42,936 nucleotides of DNA, taken from positions 40,384,980-40,427,915 of the forward strand of contig NC_068984.1 in the NCBI RefSeq assembly GCF_001194135.2, given 5' to 3'. The position numbers were made by a program, and so were the translations under genes. Each line of letters starts with the position of its first letter. Within the stretch, counting starts at the first letter, position 1. Source of the stretch: Octopus bimaculoides. Taxonomy: Eukaryota. Shown here one piece after another: positions 1,745 through 24,830 of this stretch. The notes below the pieces were generated by a model that ran no database searches, had not been told where the DNA came from, and saw nothing but the letters and a program-made list of their open reading frames with translations.

Positions 1745-3130
1745 CAGGAGTTCAACATTTTATCTGAGATTTGAATATTACACTGCGGTTTAGGATATCA
1801 ACCGGAATGGCTGCAATCTCTCTACGGACGCTTTGATTTAGTCCCACTGTTGTGTGGAGCCTTCTAGCACATACCCTATCCTTGAAGTAATCCCATAGAA
1901 AGTAGTCTACTGGGGTTAGATGCAGTCATCTGGATGGCTAGGTGATATCACCAAATTTCGAAATGAGATGTCAGGGATAGGAGTGGCTGTGTGGTAAGTA
2001 GCTTGCATACCAACCACATGGTTCTGGGTTCAGTCCCACTGCGTGGCACCTTGGGCAAGTGTCTTCTACTATAGCCTCGGGCCGACCAAAGCCTTGTGAG
2101 TGGATTTGGTAGACGGAAACTGAAAGAAGCTCGTCGTATATATGTATATATATATATGTATGTGTGTGTGTTTGTGTGTTTGTGTTTGTCCCCCCAACAT
2201 CGCTTGACAACCGATGCTGGTGTGTTTACGTCCCCGTAACTTAGCAGTTCGGCAAAAGAGACCGATAGAATAAGTACTAGGCTTCCAAAGAATAAGTCCT
2301 GGGGTCGATTTGCTCGACTAAAGGTGGTGCTCCAGCATGGCCGCAGTCAAATGACTGAAACAAGTAAAAGAGTAAAAGAGTAAAAGAGAAGAGTTACCAT
2401 TGACAGTTGCACTGTATGATTAGCGGCATCACCTTGTTGCATCCACATCTGTCTCAGGGCAAGCTTTAATAACTCGGGAAAGAAAGTCTTCAGCATATGG
2501 TTGTAGTGCTCAGCAGTTACTGTTACAGCTGCACCATGTTCGTCCCCCAAAATGTAAGGACCAATCACTCATGCATAAGTCATTGCACACCACACTGTAA
2601 CCCTCACACGATCTGAGGATTTTCACAAACCCAAAACCTAAAATTTTGTTTATTAACATAACCAGAAAGGTTAAAATAAGCTTCATCTGATGTGATCAAG
2701 AGATGGATAAAATTCTCTACCTCCCTGCACATATTAACAAACCAACCATTAAAAGTCTGTCTTTGCACCTTATCTGGCAGAAGTAATTGCTGCACTAGCT
2801 GTACCTTATATGGATATAAGTGTAGGTCTTATTTTAAGATCCTTCTGACACTGGTTCGCAAAATATTCAATTGTTGAGCCAATCGACGCATGGACGTCGA
2901 GGAACTTTGTTCCCCACACTTTGGCAGTTCTCTGCACTACGAGACGTTCGAGGTCGACCTGGGGATATTTTCTTCTCGGTATCACCTGTCTCACGGACGT
3001 TTGTGACAACACGCACGATCACCTTTCGGGATGGTGCCTGTCGCTTTCCAAAATGCTCTCGGAATTTTGCGGGGCTGCAACGATGGATCTTTGGTTGGTG
3101 AAATATTACTAAGTTTAATCAAAGAAATTA
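1745..3130 (-). mobile_element. Decayed Tc1/mariner-superfamily DNA transposon (maT/DD37D-like transposase pseudogene), interrupted by a SINE at 1974-2388
   Basis: Minus-strand translation across frameshifts and stops gives GRPRTSRSAENC, PRRSMRRLAQQLNI..ILK*DLHLYPYKVQLVQQL, ITSDEAYFNLSGYVNKQNFRFW..ENP, IGPYILGDEHGAAVTVTAEHYNHML..WMQQGDAANHT, and HLISKFGDIT*PSR*LHLTPVDYFLWDYFKDRV. The left end reads TA|CAGG. The right TIR was not found. The DD37D class is inferred from motif spacing. Confidence 0.88.
1974..2388 (+). mobile_element. Full-length tRNA-derived SINE, family A (CORE-like body)
   Basis: A-box-like TGGCTGTGTGG, B-box-like GGGTTCAGTCC, CORE-like CACCTTGGGCAAGTGTCTT, internal TA/TG microsatellite, and a 3' tail GCAGTCAAATGACTGAAACAAGTAAAAGA with (GTAAAAGA)n. 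Several copies occur in the window. Confidence 0.9.
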
Positions 3131-3399: not shown

Positions 3400-3648
3400 T
3401 TTTTCTTCCTTCACAAATGATCCCTTTGAAGCTGCGAGTACGCTTTCGCGGCAATGTTTCGTTTGACTATACTCTCGGAAGACACAAAAGCATATGGTTT
3501 TGTGTTCACGGCTGATAATAATAACGTTTCTGTCAATTAGCAAACCGTAACACTCAAACCAGGTGGCTGCTCGCTTTTGCTGCTTCCAGGAATATAGTCA
3601 AAACAAGATCATACCCTTTCAAGTGTACTCGCGGGTTCAAAGAGTTAA
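3400..3648. mobile_element. Possible piggyBac-like element terminus
   Basis: Ends in GGGTTCAAAGAGTTAA, similar to the piggyBac-type ...AAGGGTTAA end with TTAA. No partner TIR was identified. Confidence 0.3.
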
Positions 3649-4157
3649 ACATATCGTTAATTGTTGGTTAATAGCGCATGGAATAACAACATATTTCAAA
3701 TAATCAATTGAATATTGCCGCCAGTTTCTTTTTTGCTTATTTATTTCCGTGGGTTAGAAAAAAGATAGTAACTGAATAAAACGAAAATTAACTATCTTGT
3801 ATTTAATTACACAAAGTCAATAACTTATTGATAATGAAAGTATACAGTACATTAGAAATAATATTTCGGAAAGATGAAAATAACTATTGAAGCCATAAAA
3901 CAAAACATCACTTTTGCTTTAATTTTAACATCTAGTATTCATTCAAAAAAGTTATATTTATCAATTTAGATCTAATATATATATATCTATATCTATATNN
4001 NNNNNNNNNNNNNNNNNNNNNNNNNNNNNNNNNNNNNNNNNNNNNNNNNNNNNNNNNNNNNNNNNNNNNNNNNNNNNNNNNNNNNATATACCGGAGTAAG
4101 CACATACATACGAAACAAGGTGGAAAAAATAGTACTCGGATACCAGAGGTTGAGTAA

Positions 4158-10659: not shown

Positions 10660-10705
<46 letters not shown>

Positions 10706-10774
10706 ACACACACACATACATACATACACACATACATACATATATATATGCATACATATACGTGTGTGTATATG

Positions 10775-10826
<52 letters not shown>

Positions 10827-10990
10827 CATTCGTACACATGCAAAAACATACACACAGTCAAACACACATATATATATGTATGCATGTATGTATGTATGTA
10901 TGTATGTATGTATGTATGTACGTATGCATGTATGTATGTATGTATGTATGTATGTATGTATGTATGTATGTGCGTGTATATATATACACA
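10660..10990. repeat. Compound (CA)n/(TA)n/(TATG)n microsatellite
   Basis: Read directly from the sequence. Confidence 0.97.
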
Positions 10991-10995
10991 ACAAC

Positions 10996-11295
10996 AATTG
11001 CAGCGTGGGAGGTGTTTATAAGCCACTTAAAAACACACAAAAACCGTTAGATTCACTTCAACATTTAAATTTAATTTGTCAAAATATTTTCATCGCTTTG
11101 AAACCGCGACCTGTTCACTAACAAAATTCCATACTGCATCTGAGTTTTTGACAAATTAAATTTAATTGTTGAAGTGAATCTAACGGTTTTTGTGTGTTTT
11201 TAAACGGCTTATAAACACCTTCCACGCTGCAATTCCATTTGTTTTAGCACACGATCTCAGATCAAGTCACTTGCTATGCAAGTACATCTCCGTAA
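10996..11295. mobile_element. Fold-back repeat with 89-bp inverted arms (10996-11084 and 11146-11234); probable Penelope-type terminal repeat in inverted arrangement
   Basis: Arms AATTGCAGCGTGG...TTTGTCAAAA and TTTTGACAAA...CCACGCTGCAATT differ at about 4 positions. The 61-nt spacer carries most of an HHR-like fold. The right arm continues to 11295, next to a gap. Confidence 0.75.
11075..11125 (-). ncRNA. Type I minimal hammerhead-ribozyme fold with variant core G3-U4-G5-A6-A7-C8-A9
   Basis: Minus strand: UUUGUUA (stem I) GUGAACA G GUCGC-GGUUUCAAA-GCGAU (stem II) GAA A-AUAU-U (palindromic stem III, AAUAUU) U| UGACAAA (stem I'). Stem I is 7 bp and stem II is 5 bp, each with one G.U. Confidence 0.65.
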
Positions 11296-12148
11296 TATAT
11301 ATATNNNNNNNNNNNNNNNNNNNNNNNNNNNNNNNNNTATATATATAATTCAAAGAAACTGATGTTGGTCTATGTCGGTAAGACTTGCATTATTTAGTAA
11401 AATCGACAAAAAGAGTATTACAAAAAGAATTTTAGACAGAGACCTTCTTCTGGAAAAGTTCACAAGAGTGAAATAAAAACATGCATGGTGTGATACAAAT
11501 CTCGATTGAGGTGTTTGAGATTAGGTATAATGAAAGAGATGGTTCGCAAAATTCAGTGGGTGTATACAATCCAAAGAGACTAGTCTGTCTGTGTATTGGT
11601 CAGTTTCTTTGTTGGTCAGTCTGTCTGTTGGTCAGTCTGTCTGGCTCCTCTCTCTCTCCCCCTCCCCTCTCGTTCTCGCTGCATTTATGTTGTTTGGCTT
11701 ATCCTTCTCTCGTAGTGTGAAAACTAATGTCCTTAAGGTCTTGTCTGAGATACTCGATAGGTACTTTTCCTCACAACACAGATACCACGCGATACCATTG
11801 AATATTTAATAAAAATACGATTAAGATATCATACCCCATTATATAATGACGTCATCAGCGGTATCTGGGAAACTCTGTGGAAACAGAGAGTAGTCTCATT
11901 ACTGCAATAAATACTCACTATTTCCGTATCGAGCATGTTTTCATTTTGATTGAAAACCCTGACGTACACACGTACACACACACAGACACACGCAAGCACG
12001 CACATACACACACACAAGACATGCACACAGATATTTATTATTGTGTTGTATAGAACATTCTACTTGAACTCTAATATATCTGCGTCTTCGTTGTTCATAT
12101 GGCAAATATGCATGTATATGTATGTGTGTATGTATGTATGTATGTGCG

Positions 12149-18429: not shown

Positions 18430-21060
18430 TGACTAATTTATTTTGTAATTCCTCATAAAACTTACTGGCTTGAATAGCGGCTGATTTATCGGCCTTGTCT
18501 GCTGGCTAGGGCTTTGAATGCCGGTCTTTGATGAGGTCCATTATCTAGTTCGTATGGTCTTCATGTTTCTCTGTTCTTGTTGTTGATCTAGGTGAGGATA
18601 CCAGATTGTGTAGCTTTCTGGTAGCTACTTCCGACTGGTAGTTAGGAGCCCGAATTCTCTGATAGCGCATGGAGAGGCTGCTCTAACAACAGTTGTATAA
18701 TATCAGTGTATCTGTAGTGCCATGTCGCGCATGGATGGGTATCCCTGCAGTTGCATCCGGTGGGCTTTCCCGAGGCTGGAATATTATAGGGAAGCTGATT
18801 ACTTGCTTACTTAAGGTGGAAATCATCCCTGGCTGGTCTATTTTTTTAATCAATTCAATCATGGCGGTCTCCAGTAAACAAAATCGCAAACCAGACTCAG
18901 CTAAATCACCTGCTCCTTTTACTGTCGCATTCTCCAATATACGTAGTGTCCGCTCTAATCTTACAGATGTTGAGTCTTTTCTTGCTCAGAACTGTCCTGA
19001 CATCATTGCTTTGAGCGAGACAAATCTCAGTCCAGATATTTCAGATGATTTTGTTGTTCCTGGCTATCTTTCTCTCTACCGGAAGGACTCTTGCAATCAT
19101 ATGCATGGCTCGTGCGTCTTTGCTCGTGCGTCTTTGCTCGTGTCAAGTTTCCCATTGTTCGTCAGGAAAATCCCGAGGTCTTTCATGTGTTTTCGGCTTT
19201 TTCTTCTGCACTCAACTAGCTACTTGTTCTTTCTCTATCGTTCTCCATCTTCTCAAAATTGTTCTGTTATCCAGTCTGTTTCTGACAGCATCGATAAAAC
19301 TCCCTTGTTTGGTAACTCTGCGAATATATTCGTCTTTGGTGATTTTTAATATTCACCATGAAGAGTAGCTTAAGTTTTCTCATAGCACTAGTGCATCTGA
19401 CATTGAAGTGTATAATTTTGCACTTTCTCAATCGCTCACACAACTCGTTGACTTTCCTACTCGTATTCCTGATCGTGATGACCAATCTTCCGCCCTCCTT
19501 GATCTCTTTTTGTCACCAAATCCTGAAATCAGTAAGGTTTGTCATGATTATCCCCTCGAGGGATCTGATCATGTTGTTTCAGTTGACGTTTCATTGAATT
19601 GCTCTGCTGCCAATTAATCGTACTCTATTCGGCTATGATCGCGGTGACTGGGACAATTTTCGCGACTTTCTTCGTGACGTTCCTTGGACGGATATCTTTG
19701 CTGAATCTGTTGAGATCTGTGCTGGGGAAGTTACTACTTGGATTTCCGATGGTATTAACACCTTCAAGGCATGCTACTCAAATACCAGCTGAAACCGCAT
19801 TCCTCACCTTAGTTTTCTCCTGCATGTGCTGCTGCTATCGACCATCGTAATCATTTTTTCCATCAGTTTCAGCGGGATAATTCTGCGTTGAATAAACAGC
19901 TTTTCACCAATGCTCGCAATCACTGTAGGACTGTCAATCATGATGCTAAATCAGACTACGAGTAGCACATTCATGATCGCATATCATCCCAGAAAGTTGT
20001 CTCTTGACTTCTGGAGAATTATTAAAAGTGTTAGAAGTAACAATAAGTCTTCTATTCCCCCTTTATACAACGGACCTGAGGTCTTGACAATATCTAATGA
20101 TAAAGCAGAGCTCTTTGTCCAACTGTTTAATTCTCACACTATTCTCGATGACTGGTCATCCAGTTCCTGATGTTTTTCTCAAAACTGATAAACTGTTACA
20201 CAGTCGTCATATTACCTCTGCTAAGGTTACGGCTATTATGGCACGGTTGGATCCATGTAAAGCAACTGGACCTGATGGTATTCCAGTTATTGTTCTTCAG
20301 AAGTGCTCTCCAGAGTTGTCTTCTGTCTTATCTAGGCTCACCCGAAAGTGTATCTCAGAATCTTGTTTTCCTTCTTTATGGAAATTCTCAACTGCTGTTC
20401 TTGTCTTCAAGAACTGTGGTGATCGATCTAATCCTCGTAATTATAGATCAATTATACCAACCATCAATAAGGTTTCTGAGTCCTTGATTAATGACTCTCT
20501 TGTAAAATATCTTGACTCAAATCATTTATTCTCCGACTCTGAATATGGTTTCCGTGCCGGACGGTCTACTGCTGATCTTCTCACTGTTATTACCGAACGT
20601 GTTTTTCATGCTTTGAATGTATCTGTTCAAGCTAGGGCACTTGCTCTTGATATCTTTAGGGCATTTGATAGGGTTTGGCATGCTGGACTTCTATGGAATC
20701 TCCAATCCTTTGGTGAGTCAGTTTTCATGCTGAACATCACCCACCTCCTCTTTCCTTTATAACCATAGGATCAAGGTTGTTCTTGATAGTCAATATTCAT
20801 CTAGTTATTCTATTAATGTTGGGGTTCCTCAAGGATCTGTCCTGGGCCCAATTCTCTTCCTTCTTTTTATCAATGATCTGCCTGATCATATCATCTGTCA
20901 GCTAGTAATCTATGCTGATGACTCTACTTTGTACTCTTGTTTGGAGAAATCTGACGACTTGTCTGATAAGGTTGAGATCGCTGCTAACCTTGAGAATGAT
21001 CTTCGATCTGTTGTTGAGTGAGACAGAAACTGGCTTGTAACGTTCAATCCGTCGAAACCA
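18430..21060 (+). mobile_element. CR1/L2-group LINE: 5' region plus APE endonuclease and RT pseudogene, truncated at the 3' end
   Basis: From ATG 18861: AFSNIRSVRSN..PDIIALSETNL, FGDF-NIHH, FPTRIPD..LLDLFL..GSDH (APE). RT motifs: KATGPDGIP, YGFRAGRSTADLL, ALDIFRAFDRVWHAGLL, GVPQGSVLGPILFLLFINDL, YADDSTL, NWLVTFNPSK. Multiple frameshifts and stops. The 5' boundary is uncertain. Confidence 0.93.
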
Positions 21061-23873: not shown

Positions 23874-24035
23874 AATTAAATCTATCTATCTATATACATA
23901 TATATATATATGTAAAGAATTCAAGGTATATATATAAGAAATATAATCGAAATAAACAATTGGGTTTCGTGCGATTCAAAAGAAATTATGAATTATTTAC
24001 AATTGACGGATATTTGTACTCATCTTGTTCGTTGT

Positions 24036-24080
24036 TAACAACGTTTCGGCTGATATACCCTCCAGCCTTGATCAGGTGTC
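24036..24080 (-). ncRNA. Hammerhead ribozyme, predicted inactive copy
   Basis: GACAC-CUGAUCA-A-GGCUG..CAGCC-GAAAC-GUU-GUUAAC: uncompensated G8C (position 24070) and a 2-nt deletion in stem I' relative to 24831-24876. Confidence 0.8.
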
Positions 24081-24278
24081 TTGGGGAAATTTCGAACCGG
24101 GGTTCTTATTCCTAAGGTGTTTCCCGATGTTGTTATTATTATTATTATTATTATTCAGGTCACTGCCTGGAATCAAACTCGGAGTCTTGGGGTTAGTAGC
24201 CCGCGCTCTTAACCACTACTCCATATGCACGTGGGCAATTCTGGAGTGAATTTTAGGTCTTATAAATCTAATATTCTC

Positions 24279-24620
24279 TTATCCTTCCTTAATACCGGTT
24301 CCTATACGCTGTTCATATCTGCACTCGGTCTGCTTAGGAGGTTGTTGTGTCCTAGCATATATATGTGCTGCTTCTTTTAGTTTTCGTATTTTCCAGTGGT
24401 GTTCTCTGACTATTATTTTAACTTCATCCCACAGGGGGAGGTGGTCTCCATTTTTCCATACATGATCAGCTATACCCGATTTATCAATATCTCCCCGTGT
24501 CACAGCTTTGCGATGTTCCTCTAACCTTATTTTGAGAGGGCGACATGTTTCGCCTTTGCATACCCTACCACAGCTGCATGGGATGGAGTACACGCAGTTC
24601 TTAGTCATATTCTCTTCTAT
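24279..24620 (-). pseudogene. GIY-YIG endonuclease domain of a Penelope-like element (fragment with a frameshift near the end)
   Basis: CVYSIPCSCGRVCKGETCRPLKIRLEEHRKAV..KSGIADHVW..HLPLWDEVKII..RKLKEAAHI matches the Penelope GIY-YIG motifs VY.I.C.C...Y.GET...L..RL.EH and E...I. Confidence 0.92.
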
Positions 24621-24671
24621 TGGTGGTTTTACTCGAAGGAGTAAAACACTTCGCAAATACCTCCTTCGAGA

Positions 24672-24730
24672 TAGTGATTAAGAGCGCGGGCTACTAACCC
24701 CAAGATTCCGAGTTCGATTCCAGGTAGTGA

Positions 24731-24735
<5 letters not shown>
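24672..24735 (+). promoter_or_regulatory. tRNA-like (Pol III type 2) head inside the Penelope terminal repeat
   Basis: TAGTGATTAAGAGCGCGGGCTACTAACCCCAAGATTCCGAGTTCGATTCC has a B-box GTTCGATTCC. The minus-strand copy (about 24155-24230) has the A-box TGGAGTAGTGG but a mutated B-box (GTTTGA). Confidence 0.65.
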
Positions 24736-24775
<40 letters not shown>

Positions 24776-24830
24776 CAACAACATCGAGAAATACCTTAGG
24801 AATGAGAACCCAGGTTCGAAATTTCCCCAA

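What the first reader, a model, noticed from the sequence alone, without database searches (positions are those of the whole stretch)
11075..11125. Hammerhead-ribozyme fold with the core C3-G8 pair swapped to G3-C8
Seen: on the minus strand every element of a minimal type I HHR is present in register. These are a 7-bp stem I (UUUGUUA/UGACAAA), a 7-nt core, one extra nucleotide, a 5-bp stem II (GUCGC/GCGAU), G12-A13-A14, a palindromic stem III (AAUAUU) and a UUU triplet. The core reads GUGAACA rather than CUGANGA, so positions 3 and 8 are both changed and remain complementary. Established: C3-G8 is a tertiary Watson-Crick pair in the active HHR structure (Martick and Scott 2006), and engineered compensatory swaps can restore activity. 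Penelope-associated minimal HHRs with palindromic stem III work as dimers (Cervera and De la Pena 2014). Standard CUGANGA motif searches would miss this variant. Inference: this may be a repeat family carrying a naturally covaried ribozyme core. The two G.U pairs look like C-to-T decay of perfect stems.
Basis: partly seen in the sequence, partly recalled or inferred. Interest (0 to 1): 0.9.

Follow-up and report, generated by a model that had tools for sequence, protein, structure and literature searches.

The report
Hammerhead-like motif in an octopus repeat
A 51-base stretch of an octopus genome has the full layout of the small self-cutting RNA (hammerhead ribozyme) carried by Penelope-like jumping genes, with two core bases swapped; a second copy in Octopus vulgaris keeps the swap, but cutting is untested and this copy is locked inside a long hairpin.

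Summary
On the minus strand, 11125->11075 reads UUUGUUA|GUGAACA|G|GUCGC|GGUUUCAAA|GCGAU|GAA|AAUAUU|U|UGACAAA. A descriptor of this shape is very rare in shuffled sequence (G3/C8 form 0.0004 per window; none of 2500 with a palindromic helix III). A canonical one with the same build lies at 24828-24879.

Its arms are 10996-11084 and 11146-11234 (89 nt, 4 mismatches), and they sequester the stem I 3' strand. I found one more family copy, in O. vulgaris. It is a single unit flanked by (TA)n, with no inverted arm. So the foldback is a local head-to-head duplication, as is typical of PLE insertions.

That copy keeps G3 and C8. It also has A at invariant U4 and a stem I mismatch. There is no compensatory change.

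Natural 3-8 covariation (U3-A8) and a partly active engineered G3-C8 PLE hammerhead are already published.

Verdict: a plausible new core variant of a known ribozyme kind (about 0.45), against a chance look-alike (about 0.4). This copy is almost certainly inert.

The parts
10996..11139 (-). Sense repeat unit (about 144 nt): short leader, hammerhead-like motif, then an 86-nt tail ending ...CGCUGCAAUU
   Evidence: It aligns with the O. vulgaris copy L007 58212->58106 from the same 5' position to the same 3' end. L007 carries a 41-nt internal deletion.
11119..11125 (-). Stem I 5' strand, UUUGUUA
   Evidence: Read directly. It pairs with 11081-11075 in the MFE of the isolated 61-mer. L007 has UUUCUCA here.
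11112..11118 (-). Core box GUGAACA, in place of CUGANGA (G3, U4, G5, A6, A7, C8, A9)
   Evidence: G3 and C8 are shared with L007, whose core is GAGAACA (U4 -> A).
11111..11111 (-). Unpaired G between A9 and 10.1
   Evidence: It is conserved in L007. A nucleotide at this place is a conserved feature of PLE minimal hammerheads (PMC4209133).
11092..11110 (-). Helix II hairpin: GUCGC / 9-nt loop GGUUUCAAA / GCGAU. The closing pair G10.1.U11.1 is a wobble.
   Evidence: It is formed in every fold computed. L007 has GCGAC, that is G10.1-C11.1.
11089..11091 (-). G12 A13 A14
   Evidence: Identical in L007.
11083..11088 (-). Helix III palindrome AAUAUU (A15.1 ... U16.1)
   Evidence: L007 lacks one A here (AUAUU).
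11082..11082 (-). U17. The predicted cleavage site is 3' of it, between 11082 and 11081.
   Evidence: Inferred from hammerhead numbering. Not tested.
11075..11081 (-). Stem I 3' strand, UGACAAA. It is also the inner end of the left foldback arm.
10996..11084 (.). Left arm of the foldback (the tail of the sense unit)
   Evidence: the repeat finder I3: 89-nt arms, 96% complementary, 61 nt apart. The arms differ at 4 positions.
11146..11234 (+). Right arm: an inverted copy of the last 89 nt of the unit, 5'-truncated within 3 nt of the predicted cleavage site
   Evidence: It is absent from the O. vulgaris copy.
11140..11145 (.). 6-nt filler between the inverted copy and the sense unit
   Evidence: Homology to L007 starts at about 11139 and arm homology ends at 11146.
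10700..10990 (.). Microsatellite ((AC)n, (TA)n, (ATGT)n) flanking the 3' end of the unit
   Evidence: The other side has (TA)n around the N gap at 11295-11347.

Best explanation
The motif is a diverged Penelope-type minimal hammerhead. It is carried by a short (about 145 nt) interspersed Octopus repeat, and the family-level core has the 3-8 tertiary pair inverted (G3-C8).

How it would work (inferred). In RNA of a source element the motif would fold into the three-way junction. It would extend its 1-bp helix III by pairing the palindrome AAUAUU with a second copy, as PLE minimal hammerheads do. It would then cleave 3' of U17. The rate would be reduced, as with engineered C3G/G8C mutants.

The window copy is a dead insertion. 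It landed in a microsatellite together with a head-to-head inverted copy of its last 89 nt. Published PLE insertions often show this arrangement, and the PLE remnant at 24000-24944 shows it in this same window. The copy has since taken C->U changes. Its stem I strand is buried in an 89-bp hairpin.

Shown: the anatomy, the family, the conserved G3/C8 and the inverted duplication. Inferred: descent from a PLE hammerhead and any catalytic activity.
For: (1) The full type I layout is in register.

(2) Chance expectation is low: 0.0004 per window for G3/C8, and 0 of 2500 shuffles with a palindromic helix III. Background in real DNA agrees with this.

The second copy also has G10.1-C11.1.

(4) A canonical PLE hammerhead of the same build lies in the same window: CUGAUGA, extra A, a 6-bp helix II, ACGU, U17. 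It belongs to an 11-copy family with a compensatory U-A/C-G change in helix II.

(5) The second copy keeps G3 and C8. It differs from the window at three paired positions in ways that keep pairing.

(6) The second copy is a solo unit flanked by (TA)n on both sides, and the solo unit has no significant terminal inverted repeat (p = 0.5). The window's geometry has 3' ends outward and an inverted 5'-truncated partner. This equals that of the PLE at 24000-24944 and the published PLE pattern, including the bias to microsatellites (PMC8557442).

(7) C3G/G8C partly restores cleavage in a PLE hammerhead (PMC11167929). A natural U3-A8 covariation exists (PMC4209133).

(8) The arms differ by only 4.5%. 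So most departures from the canonical core predate this insertion.
Against: - Only two copies are known, with no compensatory double change.
- U4, which is invariant in hammerheads, is A in the second copy. One stem I pair there is C x C, and helix III loses its perfect palindrome.
- The hammerhead part is less conserved than the tail, 7/51 against 1/44.
- No Rfam hammerhead model hits at E <= 10. A covariance model of the local PLE hammerhead family does not hit either.
- No RT/GIY-YIG ORF or longer PLE sequence adjoins either copy.
- In the solo unit's MFE, the stem I 3' strand pairs with the tail instead.
- In the foldback, a -138 kcal/mol hairpin wins.
- G3-C8 from C3-G8 needs two transversions.
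- My descriptor was written after the fact.
Confidence: 0.45

Rival explanations
1. Chance look-alike. The repeat is an ordinary short interspersed element with no ribozyme ancestry. A GC-rich hairpin (helix II) flanked by A/U-rich sequence happens to spell a hammerhead with two core 'errors' that can be rationalised as a covarying pair.
For: - The second copy fails the descriptor (core GAGAACA, stem I mismatch).
- There is no compensatory change.
- The motif is no better conserved than its flank.
- Neither Rfam nor the family covariance model hits it.
- Stem I is not in the MFE of the solo unit.
- With any two core changes allowed, the descriptor is expected about 0.35 times per window (scaled). 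It was seen once in 117 kb. A reader free to rationalise will therefore meet candidates.
Against: - Only 3 of 351 one- or two-change core variants keep a Watson-Crick 3/8 pair.
- The rate for G3/C8 is 0.0004 per window, and lower still with the palindrome and the 7-bp and 5-bp stems.
- The extra nucleotide, the palindromic helix III and G10.1-C11.1 in the second copy are independent published hallmarks.
- The insertion context is PLE-like.
Confidence: 0.4
2. The functional or structural unit is the 239-bp foldback itself. It would be a MITE-like DNA transposon with 89-bp terminal inverted repeats, or a long hairpin that yields small RNAs. The hammerhead-like loop would be incidental.
For: - The 89-nt arms are 96% complementary.
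- The hairpin MFE is -138 / -134 kcal/mol, z about -22.
- It resembles MITE-derived plant miRNA hairpins in Rfam: MIR8562 at 70 bits, MIR6140 at 54 bits.
- AATT lies at both outer ends.
Against: - The only other family copy has no inverted arm and is flanked by (TA)n directly.
- The solo unit has no significant terminal inverted repeat.
- There is no other foldback copy in the window or in about 330 kb of cephalopod DNA.
- The Rfam hits are far below gathering scores (70 against 211) and reflect a generic long hairpin.
- AATT is palindromic, so it cannot be told apart from arm extension.
Confidence: 0.1
3. This very locus encodes a currently active self-cleaving ribozyme.
For: The window copy is the more hammerhead-like of the two: U4, an intact 7-bp stem I and a perfect 6-nt palindrome.
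Against: - G10.1.U11.1 is a wobble.
- It is a single copy with no tandem partner for dimerisation.
- Stem I is sequestered by the foldback if the arms are co-transcribed.
- PLE minimal hammerheads cleave poorly even when canonical (PMC4209133).
- Engineered G3-C8 is only partly active (PMC11167929).
Confidence: 0.05

Closest known systems
Minimal type I hammerheads of Penelope-like elements (Cervera & De la Pena 2014, PMC4209133)
   Same: Type I topology. An unpaired nucleotide between A9 and 10.1. A 1-bp helix III with a palindromic loop, implying action as a dimer. Short loop-less helix I. Mostly solo, dispersed copies. G10.1-C11.1 in the O. vulgaris copy.
   Different: The core has G3 and C8 instead of C3 and G8. 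Helix II is 5 bp. No RT/GIY-YIG ORF or pLTR adjoins either copy. The window copy has G10.1.U11.1.
U3-A8 core variant of S. mansoni Cercyon PLE hammerheads (PMC4209133)
   Same: A natural change of both partners of the 3-8 tertiary pair that keeps Watson-Crick complementarity, in a PLE-type minimal hammerhead, family-wide.
   Different: That variant is U-A, reachable by two transitions through a G.U-like intermediate, with about 1300 hits. Here the pair is G-C inverted, which needs two transversions, and only two copies have been seen.
Engineered C3G/G8C double mutants (Martick & Scott 2006, as cited in PMC11167929; Anolis Poseidon PLE hammerhead, PMC11167929)
   Same: The identical core change. 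Each single mutant is dead and the double mutant partly restores cleavage.
   Different: Those are laboratory constructs in otherwise canonical ribozymes. Here the change is natural and its activity is unknown.
The bona fide PLE hammerhead family in the same window (24828-24879 +; decayed copy 24083-24034 -)
   Same: The same overall build: an extra nucleotide after A9, a 5- or 6-bp helix II with an 8- to 10-nt loop, GAA, a palindromic helix III, U17, then a 50- to 90-nt tail to the element's 3' end. Both loci have an inverted partner copy.
   Different: That family has a canonical CUGAUGA core, lies just 3' of a GIY-YIG ORF, and has 11 copies with helix II covariation. It shares no sequence with the candidate outside the core.
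Non-LTR retrozymes (Cervera & De la Pena 2020, PMC7229834)
   Same: Short non-autonomous units (170-400 nt) carrying one type I hammerhead, thought to be mobilised by PLEs.
   Different: Retrozymes occur as tandem arrays and carry canonical cores. Here the copies are solo (one with an inverted partial copy) and no tandem array was seen.
MITEs / foldback elements
   Same: A 239-bp, A+T-rich, near-perfect hairpin in a TA-rich target.
   Different: The other family member lacks the inverted arm. The solo unit has no significant terminal inverted repeat, and no clear target-site duplication was found.

Membership tests
Hammerhead ribozyme (type I, PLE minimal variant) | Core boxes C3-U4-G5-A6-N7-G8-A9 and G12-A13-A14 | tested here: not met
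   The window has G3 and C8 (GUGAACA). L007 also has A4 (GAGAACA). G5, A6, A9 and G12-A14 are present in both.
Hammerhead ribozyme (type I, PLE minimal variant) | Positions 3 and 8 able to form a Watson-Crick tertiary pair | tested here: met
   G3-C8 in both copies (helix 2: GC:2).
Hammerhead ribozyme (type I, PLE minimal variant) | Three helices in register around the core, with an A15.1-U16.1 pair and H17 | tested here: met
   Window: 7-bp helix I, 5-bp helix II, A...U, U17. L007: 13 of 14 pairs kept.
Hammerhead ribozyme (type I, PLE minimal variant) | [quoted passage not shown] | tested here: met
   G at 11111, conserved in L007.
Hammerhead ribozyme (type I, PLE minimal variant) | Conserved G10.1-C11.1 pair (PMC4209133) | tested here: inconclusive
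   Window G.U, L007 G-C. The ancestral state is most simply G-C.
Hammerhead ribozyme (type I, PLE minimal variant) | Palindromic helix III / loop 3 allowing a dimeric active form | tested here: inconclusive
   Window AAUAUU is a perfect palindrome. L007 AUAUU is imperfect because of a 1-nt deletion. RNAcofold of two monomers did not form the helix III duplex. The same was true of the canonical copy, so this is uninformative.
Hammerhead ribozyme (type I, PLE minimal variant) | Consensus family with covariation and compensatory changes in the helices | tested here: inconclusive
   Two copies only: 3 one-sided pair-preserving changes, 1 broken pair, 0 compensatory.
Hammerhead ribozyme (type I, PLE minimal variant) | Location in the pseudo-LTR / 3' region of an element encoding RT and a GIY-YIG endonuclease | tested here: not met
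   No such ORF adjoins 10996-11234 or the L007 copy. Published minimal hammerheads are, however, mostly solo too (PMC4209133).
Hammerhead ribozyme (type I, PLE minimal variant) | Match to curated hammerhead covariance models (Rfam) | tested here: not met
   No hammerhead hit at E <= 10. The same search misses the canonical PLE hammerhead at 24828-24879, so the test has no power here.
Hammerhead ribozyme (type I, PLE minimal variant) | Site-specific self-cleavage 3' of position 17 | not testable with these tools
   This needs in vitro transcription or RNA-end mapping.
MITE / foldback DNA transposon | Terminal inverted repeats present in family members, plus target-site duplication | tested here: not met
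   The L007 copy lacks the inverted arm. The ends of the solo unit are not significantly inverted-repeated (p = 0.5). The flanks are microsatellite, so a target-site duplication cannot be read.
miRNA precursor families (Rfam MIR8562, MIR6140, MIR4208) | Score at or above the family's gathering threshold | tested here: not met
   70.3 against 211, 54.1 against 140 and 56.1 against 140 bits. Both strands hit, which is a generic long-hairpin effect.

The most novel reading that the evidence does not exclude
Octopus genomes carry a family of Penelope-type minimal hammerheads in which the catalytic-core tertiary pair is naturally inverted to G3-C8 and the ribozyme still self-cleaves. This would be a second natural covariation of that pair, after U3-A8. 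It would show in nature that the identity of the base at position 8 is dispensable as long as it pairs with position 3.
Probability: 0.25. Interest if true: 0.6.

Novelty: new variant of a known kind. Interest (0 to 1): 0.4.

Why it matters
If the family consensus proves to be an intact hammerhead with G3-C8, three things follow.
- It would give natural, evolutionary confirmation of the C3-G8 tertiary pair seen in the 2006 full-length structure.
- It would show that CUGANGA-anchored searches undercount hammerheads in animal genomes.
- It would supply a ready-made natural system for asking what G8 contributes beyond pairing.

It would not open a new field. Natural U3-A8 variants and engineered G3-C8 rescue are already known. 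The role of hammerheads in PLE transposition is itself doubtful, since catalytic mutants insert normally in vitro (PMC11167929).

If it is a look-alike, the case is a useful caution about rationalising two-mismatch motif hits.

Tried and rejected
1. Rfam, whole window at gathering thresholds and 10950-11300 at E <= 10: no hammerhead hit. I rejected this as evidence against the motif, because the canonical PLE hammerhead at 24828-24879 is missed too.

2. Other copies in the window: none, by pattern search with 3 mismatches or by blastn with word size 7.

3. Exact-pattern scans of public collections. Viral contigs gave nothing. Metagenome contigs gave one chance match in a G+C-rich contig that reads like bacterial DNA (L001). 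Genome contigs gave one match in Pontixanthobacter (L006), which I took as chance and did not inspect. No eukaryotic genome collection was available.

4. Searching a translated arm peptide against predicted proteins, to reach other copies: no candidates.

5. Sampling Octopus DNA through TE proteins, using 11 of 12 look-ups. This gave about 160 kb of Octopus DNA and one family copy (L007). Three ENA assemblies proved not to be genus Octopus, as they share no repeats with the window.

6. Weak nhmmer hits (L011 18835-18774, L008 11312-11286, L009 7167-7149, window 3622-3654). I read the first three in sequence and the last from its alignment, and dismissed all as chance.

7. A covariance model built from 11 copies of the local PLE hammerhead: it does not reach the candidate. 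The model is too family-specific to count against it.

8. Terminal inverted repeats within the solo unit: not significant (p = 0.5), so I dropped the classic MITE reading.

9. Dimer co-folding: it does not give the helix III duplex for either the candidate or the canonical copy, so it is uninformative.

10. Lunse, Weinberg & Breaker (RNA Biol 14:1499, PMC5785218) could not be read. I cannot say whether G3-C8 variants are reported there.

Full report
WHAT IS THERE. The window is A+T-rich, microsatellite-rich eukaryotic DNA with assembly gaps. Its repeats match O. vulgaris and O. bimaculoides chromosomes at 82-93% identity, so it is from the genus Octopus. On the minus strand, 11125->11075 reads UUUGUUA | GUGAACA | G | GUCGC-GGUUUCAAA-GCGAU | GAA | AAUAUU | U | UGACAAA. 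Folded alone, the 61-mer gives stems I and II as its minimum-free-energy (MFE) structure, at -10.8 kcal/mol. That energy is unremarkable (z = -1.4).

The motif is embedded in a 239-bp foldback. Arms 10996-11084 and 11146-11234 are 89 nt long and differ at 4 positions, with 61 nt between them. The whole hairpin folds at -138 kcal/mol (z = -22) on the motif's strand. It swallows the stem I 3' strand, which is the inner end of the left arm. Rfam matches the hairpin only as a generic long stem, to MITE-derived plant miRNA families, on both strands and far below their thresholds.

IS IT MORE THAN CHANCE?
With any Watson-Crick 3/8 pair it hits 0.004 times per block-wise dinucleotide shuffle of the window. 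With G3/C8 it hits 0.0004 times. With a palindromic helix III it hit 0 of 2500 shuffles.
- In real sequence (the window plus 74 kb of cephalopod loci), I allowed any nucleotides at positions 3 and 8, or any two changes in the nine fixed core positions. The only hits were the candidate, two bona fide hammerheads and one weak non-palindromic hit. That agrees with the shuffle rates.
- So a chance match of this quality is expected well under once per thousand windows.
- The descriptor is post hoc, and I do not know how many windows were screened.

A YARDSTICK IN THE SAME WINDOW.
- The scan also found a canonical minimal hammerhead at 24828-24879 (+): GACAC | CUGAUGA | A | GGCUGG-AGGGUAUA-UCAGCC | GAA | ACGU | U | GUGUU.
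- It belongs to the 3' region of a Penelope-like element (PLE). A minus-strand ORF at 24656->24279 has many homologues. One is annotated as a GIY-YIG endonuclease, and some lie next to reverse-transcriptase ORFs.
- That ORF is followed by a decayed copy of the same 3' region. Its hammerhead, at 24083->24034, has G8->C and a 2-nt deletion in stem I.
- The intact copy at 24660-24944 is an inverted, 5'-truncated partner.
- Eleven copies from Octopus and another cephalopod conserve the core. They show a compensatory U-A/C-G change in helix II.
- Rfam misses this genuine hammerhead as well. Its silence on the candidate therefore means nothing.

LITERATURE.
- The same paper reports a natural core covariation, U3-A8, with about 1300 hits in S. 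mansoni. It also notes that most motifs are solo and that in vitro activity is low.
- Craig et al. 2021 (PMC8557442) describe PLE insertions as often carrying an inverted 5'-truncated copy, and as biased towards microsatellites.
- PMC11167929 shows, in an Anolis PLE hammerhead, that C3G and G8C each abolish cleavage and that the double mutant partly restores it. Catalytic mutants do not affect insertion in vitro.

A SECOND FAMILY MEMBER.
- No eukaryotic DNA collection was available, so I sampled Octopus DNA through transposon proteins. In about 160 kb I found one more copy: O. vulgaris OX597820.1, L007 58212->58106 on the minus strand (E = 1e-26 by blastn, 5e-34 by nhmmer).
- It reads (TA)n | GCACGGAC UUUCUCA GAGAACA G GUCGC GGUCUCAAA GCGAC GAA AUAUU U UGGCAAA UCAAAUUUAAAUGUUGAAGUGAAUCUAACG [41-nt deletion] CUGCAAUUG | (TA)n.

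It shows three things.
1. The family is real, and probably abundant. One copy in 160 kb scales to thousands per genome, with very wide error.
2. The basic unit is a solo element of about 144 nt. Both copies share the same 5' and 3' ends, and the solo unit has no inverted arm and no significant terminal inverted repeat (p = 0.5). So the window's foldback is a local head-to-head duplication of the last 89 nt, with 3' ends pointing outward. This is the same geometry as the PLE at 24000-24944. The inverted copy begins within 3 nt of the predicted cleavage site. I note this but do not lean on it.
3. On the hammerhead itself the evidence is mixed.
   - G3, C8, G5, A6, A9, the extra G, GAA, A15.1, U16.1 and U17 are all shared.
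   - A third paired position changes U-A to U.G.
   - U4 is A in L007. One stem I pair becomes C x C, and an A is lost from the palindrome.
   - The tally is 27 of 28 pair cells paired, 3 one-sided changes, 1 break and 0 compensatory changes.
   - The hammerhead part differs at 7 of 51 positions, against 1 of 44 in the tail. Copies of a mobile element decay neutrally, so this neither supports nor refutes function in a source element.

WEIGHING.
- For descent from a hammerhead: the very low chance rate; the independent hallmarks (extra nucleotide, palindrome, G10.1-C11.1 in the sister copy); the PLE-like insertion context; and the density of PLE hammerhead relics in this window. There are three such relics, counting the decayed one at 37334-37386 found by the covariance model.
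- Since the two arms differ by only 4.5%, only about one substitution is expected in the 51-nt motif since the duplication. The G3/C8 state therefore predates this insertion, and it is shared by a copy that is 12% diverged. This means it was a property of the source lineage, not private decay.
- Two specific transversions that restore complementarity are improbable under neutral drift, which is the usual argument for selection on the pair.
- Against: n = 2; A4 in one copy; no compensatory change; no link to a coding PLE; MFE folds that do not favour stem I; and a descriptor fitted after the fact.
- I put descent from a PLE-type hammerhead at about 0.45, and a chance look-alike at about 0.4. 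The foldback as the real functional unit (MITE or small-RNA hairpin) gets about 0.1. Present-day activity at this locus gets about 0.05.

MECHANISM IF REAL (inferred). The source RNA folds into the three-way junction. G3 pairs with C8 in place of C3-G8. Two copies pair through AAUAUU to build a stable helix III. Cleavage occurs 3' of U17 (window 11082|11081) at a reduced rate. The genomic copy studied here is a relic: it has no tandem partner, its 10.1-11.1 pair is a wobble, and its stem I is locked in the foldback.

NOVELTY. This would be a new core variant of a known kind of ribozyme in a known kind of host element. It is neither categorically new nor established. I did not find a report of a natural G3-C8 hammerhead in the searchable library. 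One key paper (Lunse et al.) could not be read.

Noticed in passing
window 24828-24879 (+), within 24660-24944: A canonical Penelope-type minimal hammerhead (CUGAUGA, extra A, helix II GGCUGG/UCAGCC, ACGU, U17). It is missed by Rfam at E <= 10. Eleven copies in Octopus and another cephalopod show a compensatory U-A/C-G change in helix II.
   Followed up: yes
window 24000-24656 (-): A PLE remnant. A GIY-YIG-like ORF at 24656->24279 is followed by its 3' region, whose hammerhead (24083->24034) carries a single G8->C change and a 2-nt deletion in stem I. Together with the inverted copy at 24660-24944 it forms the classic PLE inverted arrangement. Pfam gave no hit for the ORF; the identification rests on homologues.
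   Followed up: partly
window 37334-37386 (+): A third hammerhead relic. The boxes AACAC-CUGAAGA and GAAACGUUGCGUU are kept, but helix II has decayed. It was found only with the covariance model built here (18 bits, E = 0.02).
   Followed up: partly
window 39926-40041 (+): A 5S rRNA match at 49.4 bits (gathering score 38), covering the full model length. It could be a 5S gene, a pseudogene or a 5S-derived SINE head; the score alone does not tell.
   Followed up: no
window 11248-11296 (+); L007 5099-5147: The 50 nt to the right of the foldback (...GCAAGTACATCTCCGTAAT) is itself a short repeat. It has an 86% identical copy in O. vulgaris, again abutting a microsatellite. Its nature is unknown.
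   Followed up: partly
window 18526-21057 (+): A degraded LINE: an ORF at 18693-19349 (no Pfam hit) followed by a reverse-transcriptase ORF (RVT_1). It is 83-87% identical to copies in O. vulgaris and O. bimaculoides.
   Followed up: partly
window 1976-2398 and 25951-26352: A repeat of about 400 bp, present twice in the window in opposite orientations and many times in the O. vulgaris loci (80-92% identity). It is probably an abundant Octopus SINE-like element.
   Followed up: no
window 24180-24225 (-) and 24675-24725 (+): The PLE 3' region contains a tRNA-like stretch (GGTTAAGAGCGCGGGCTACTAACCCCAAGA(T/C)TCCGAGTT(C/T)GATTCC), followed by (AAT)n. ARAGORN calls no tRNA. It may be a SINE head fused to, or derived from, the PLE tail.
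   Followed up: partly
window 11084 / 11146 versus 11082|11081: The inverted arm starts within 3 nt of the predicted hammerhead cleavage site. The junction is a run of U, so its exact position is ambiguous. This is suggestive of copying from a cleaved RNA, but with one locus it could be coincidence (roughly 5%).
   Followed up: no
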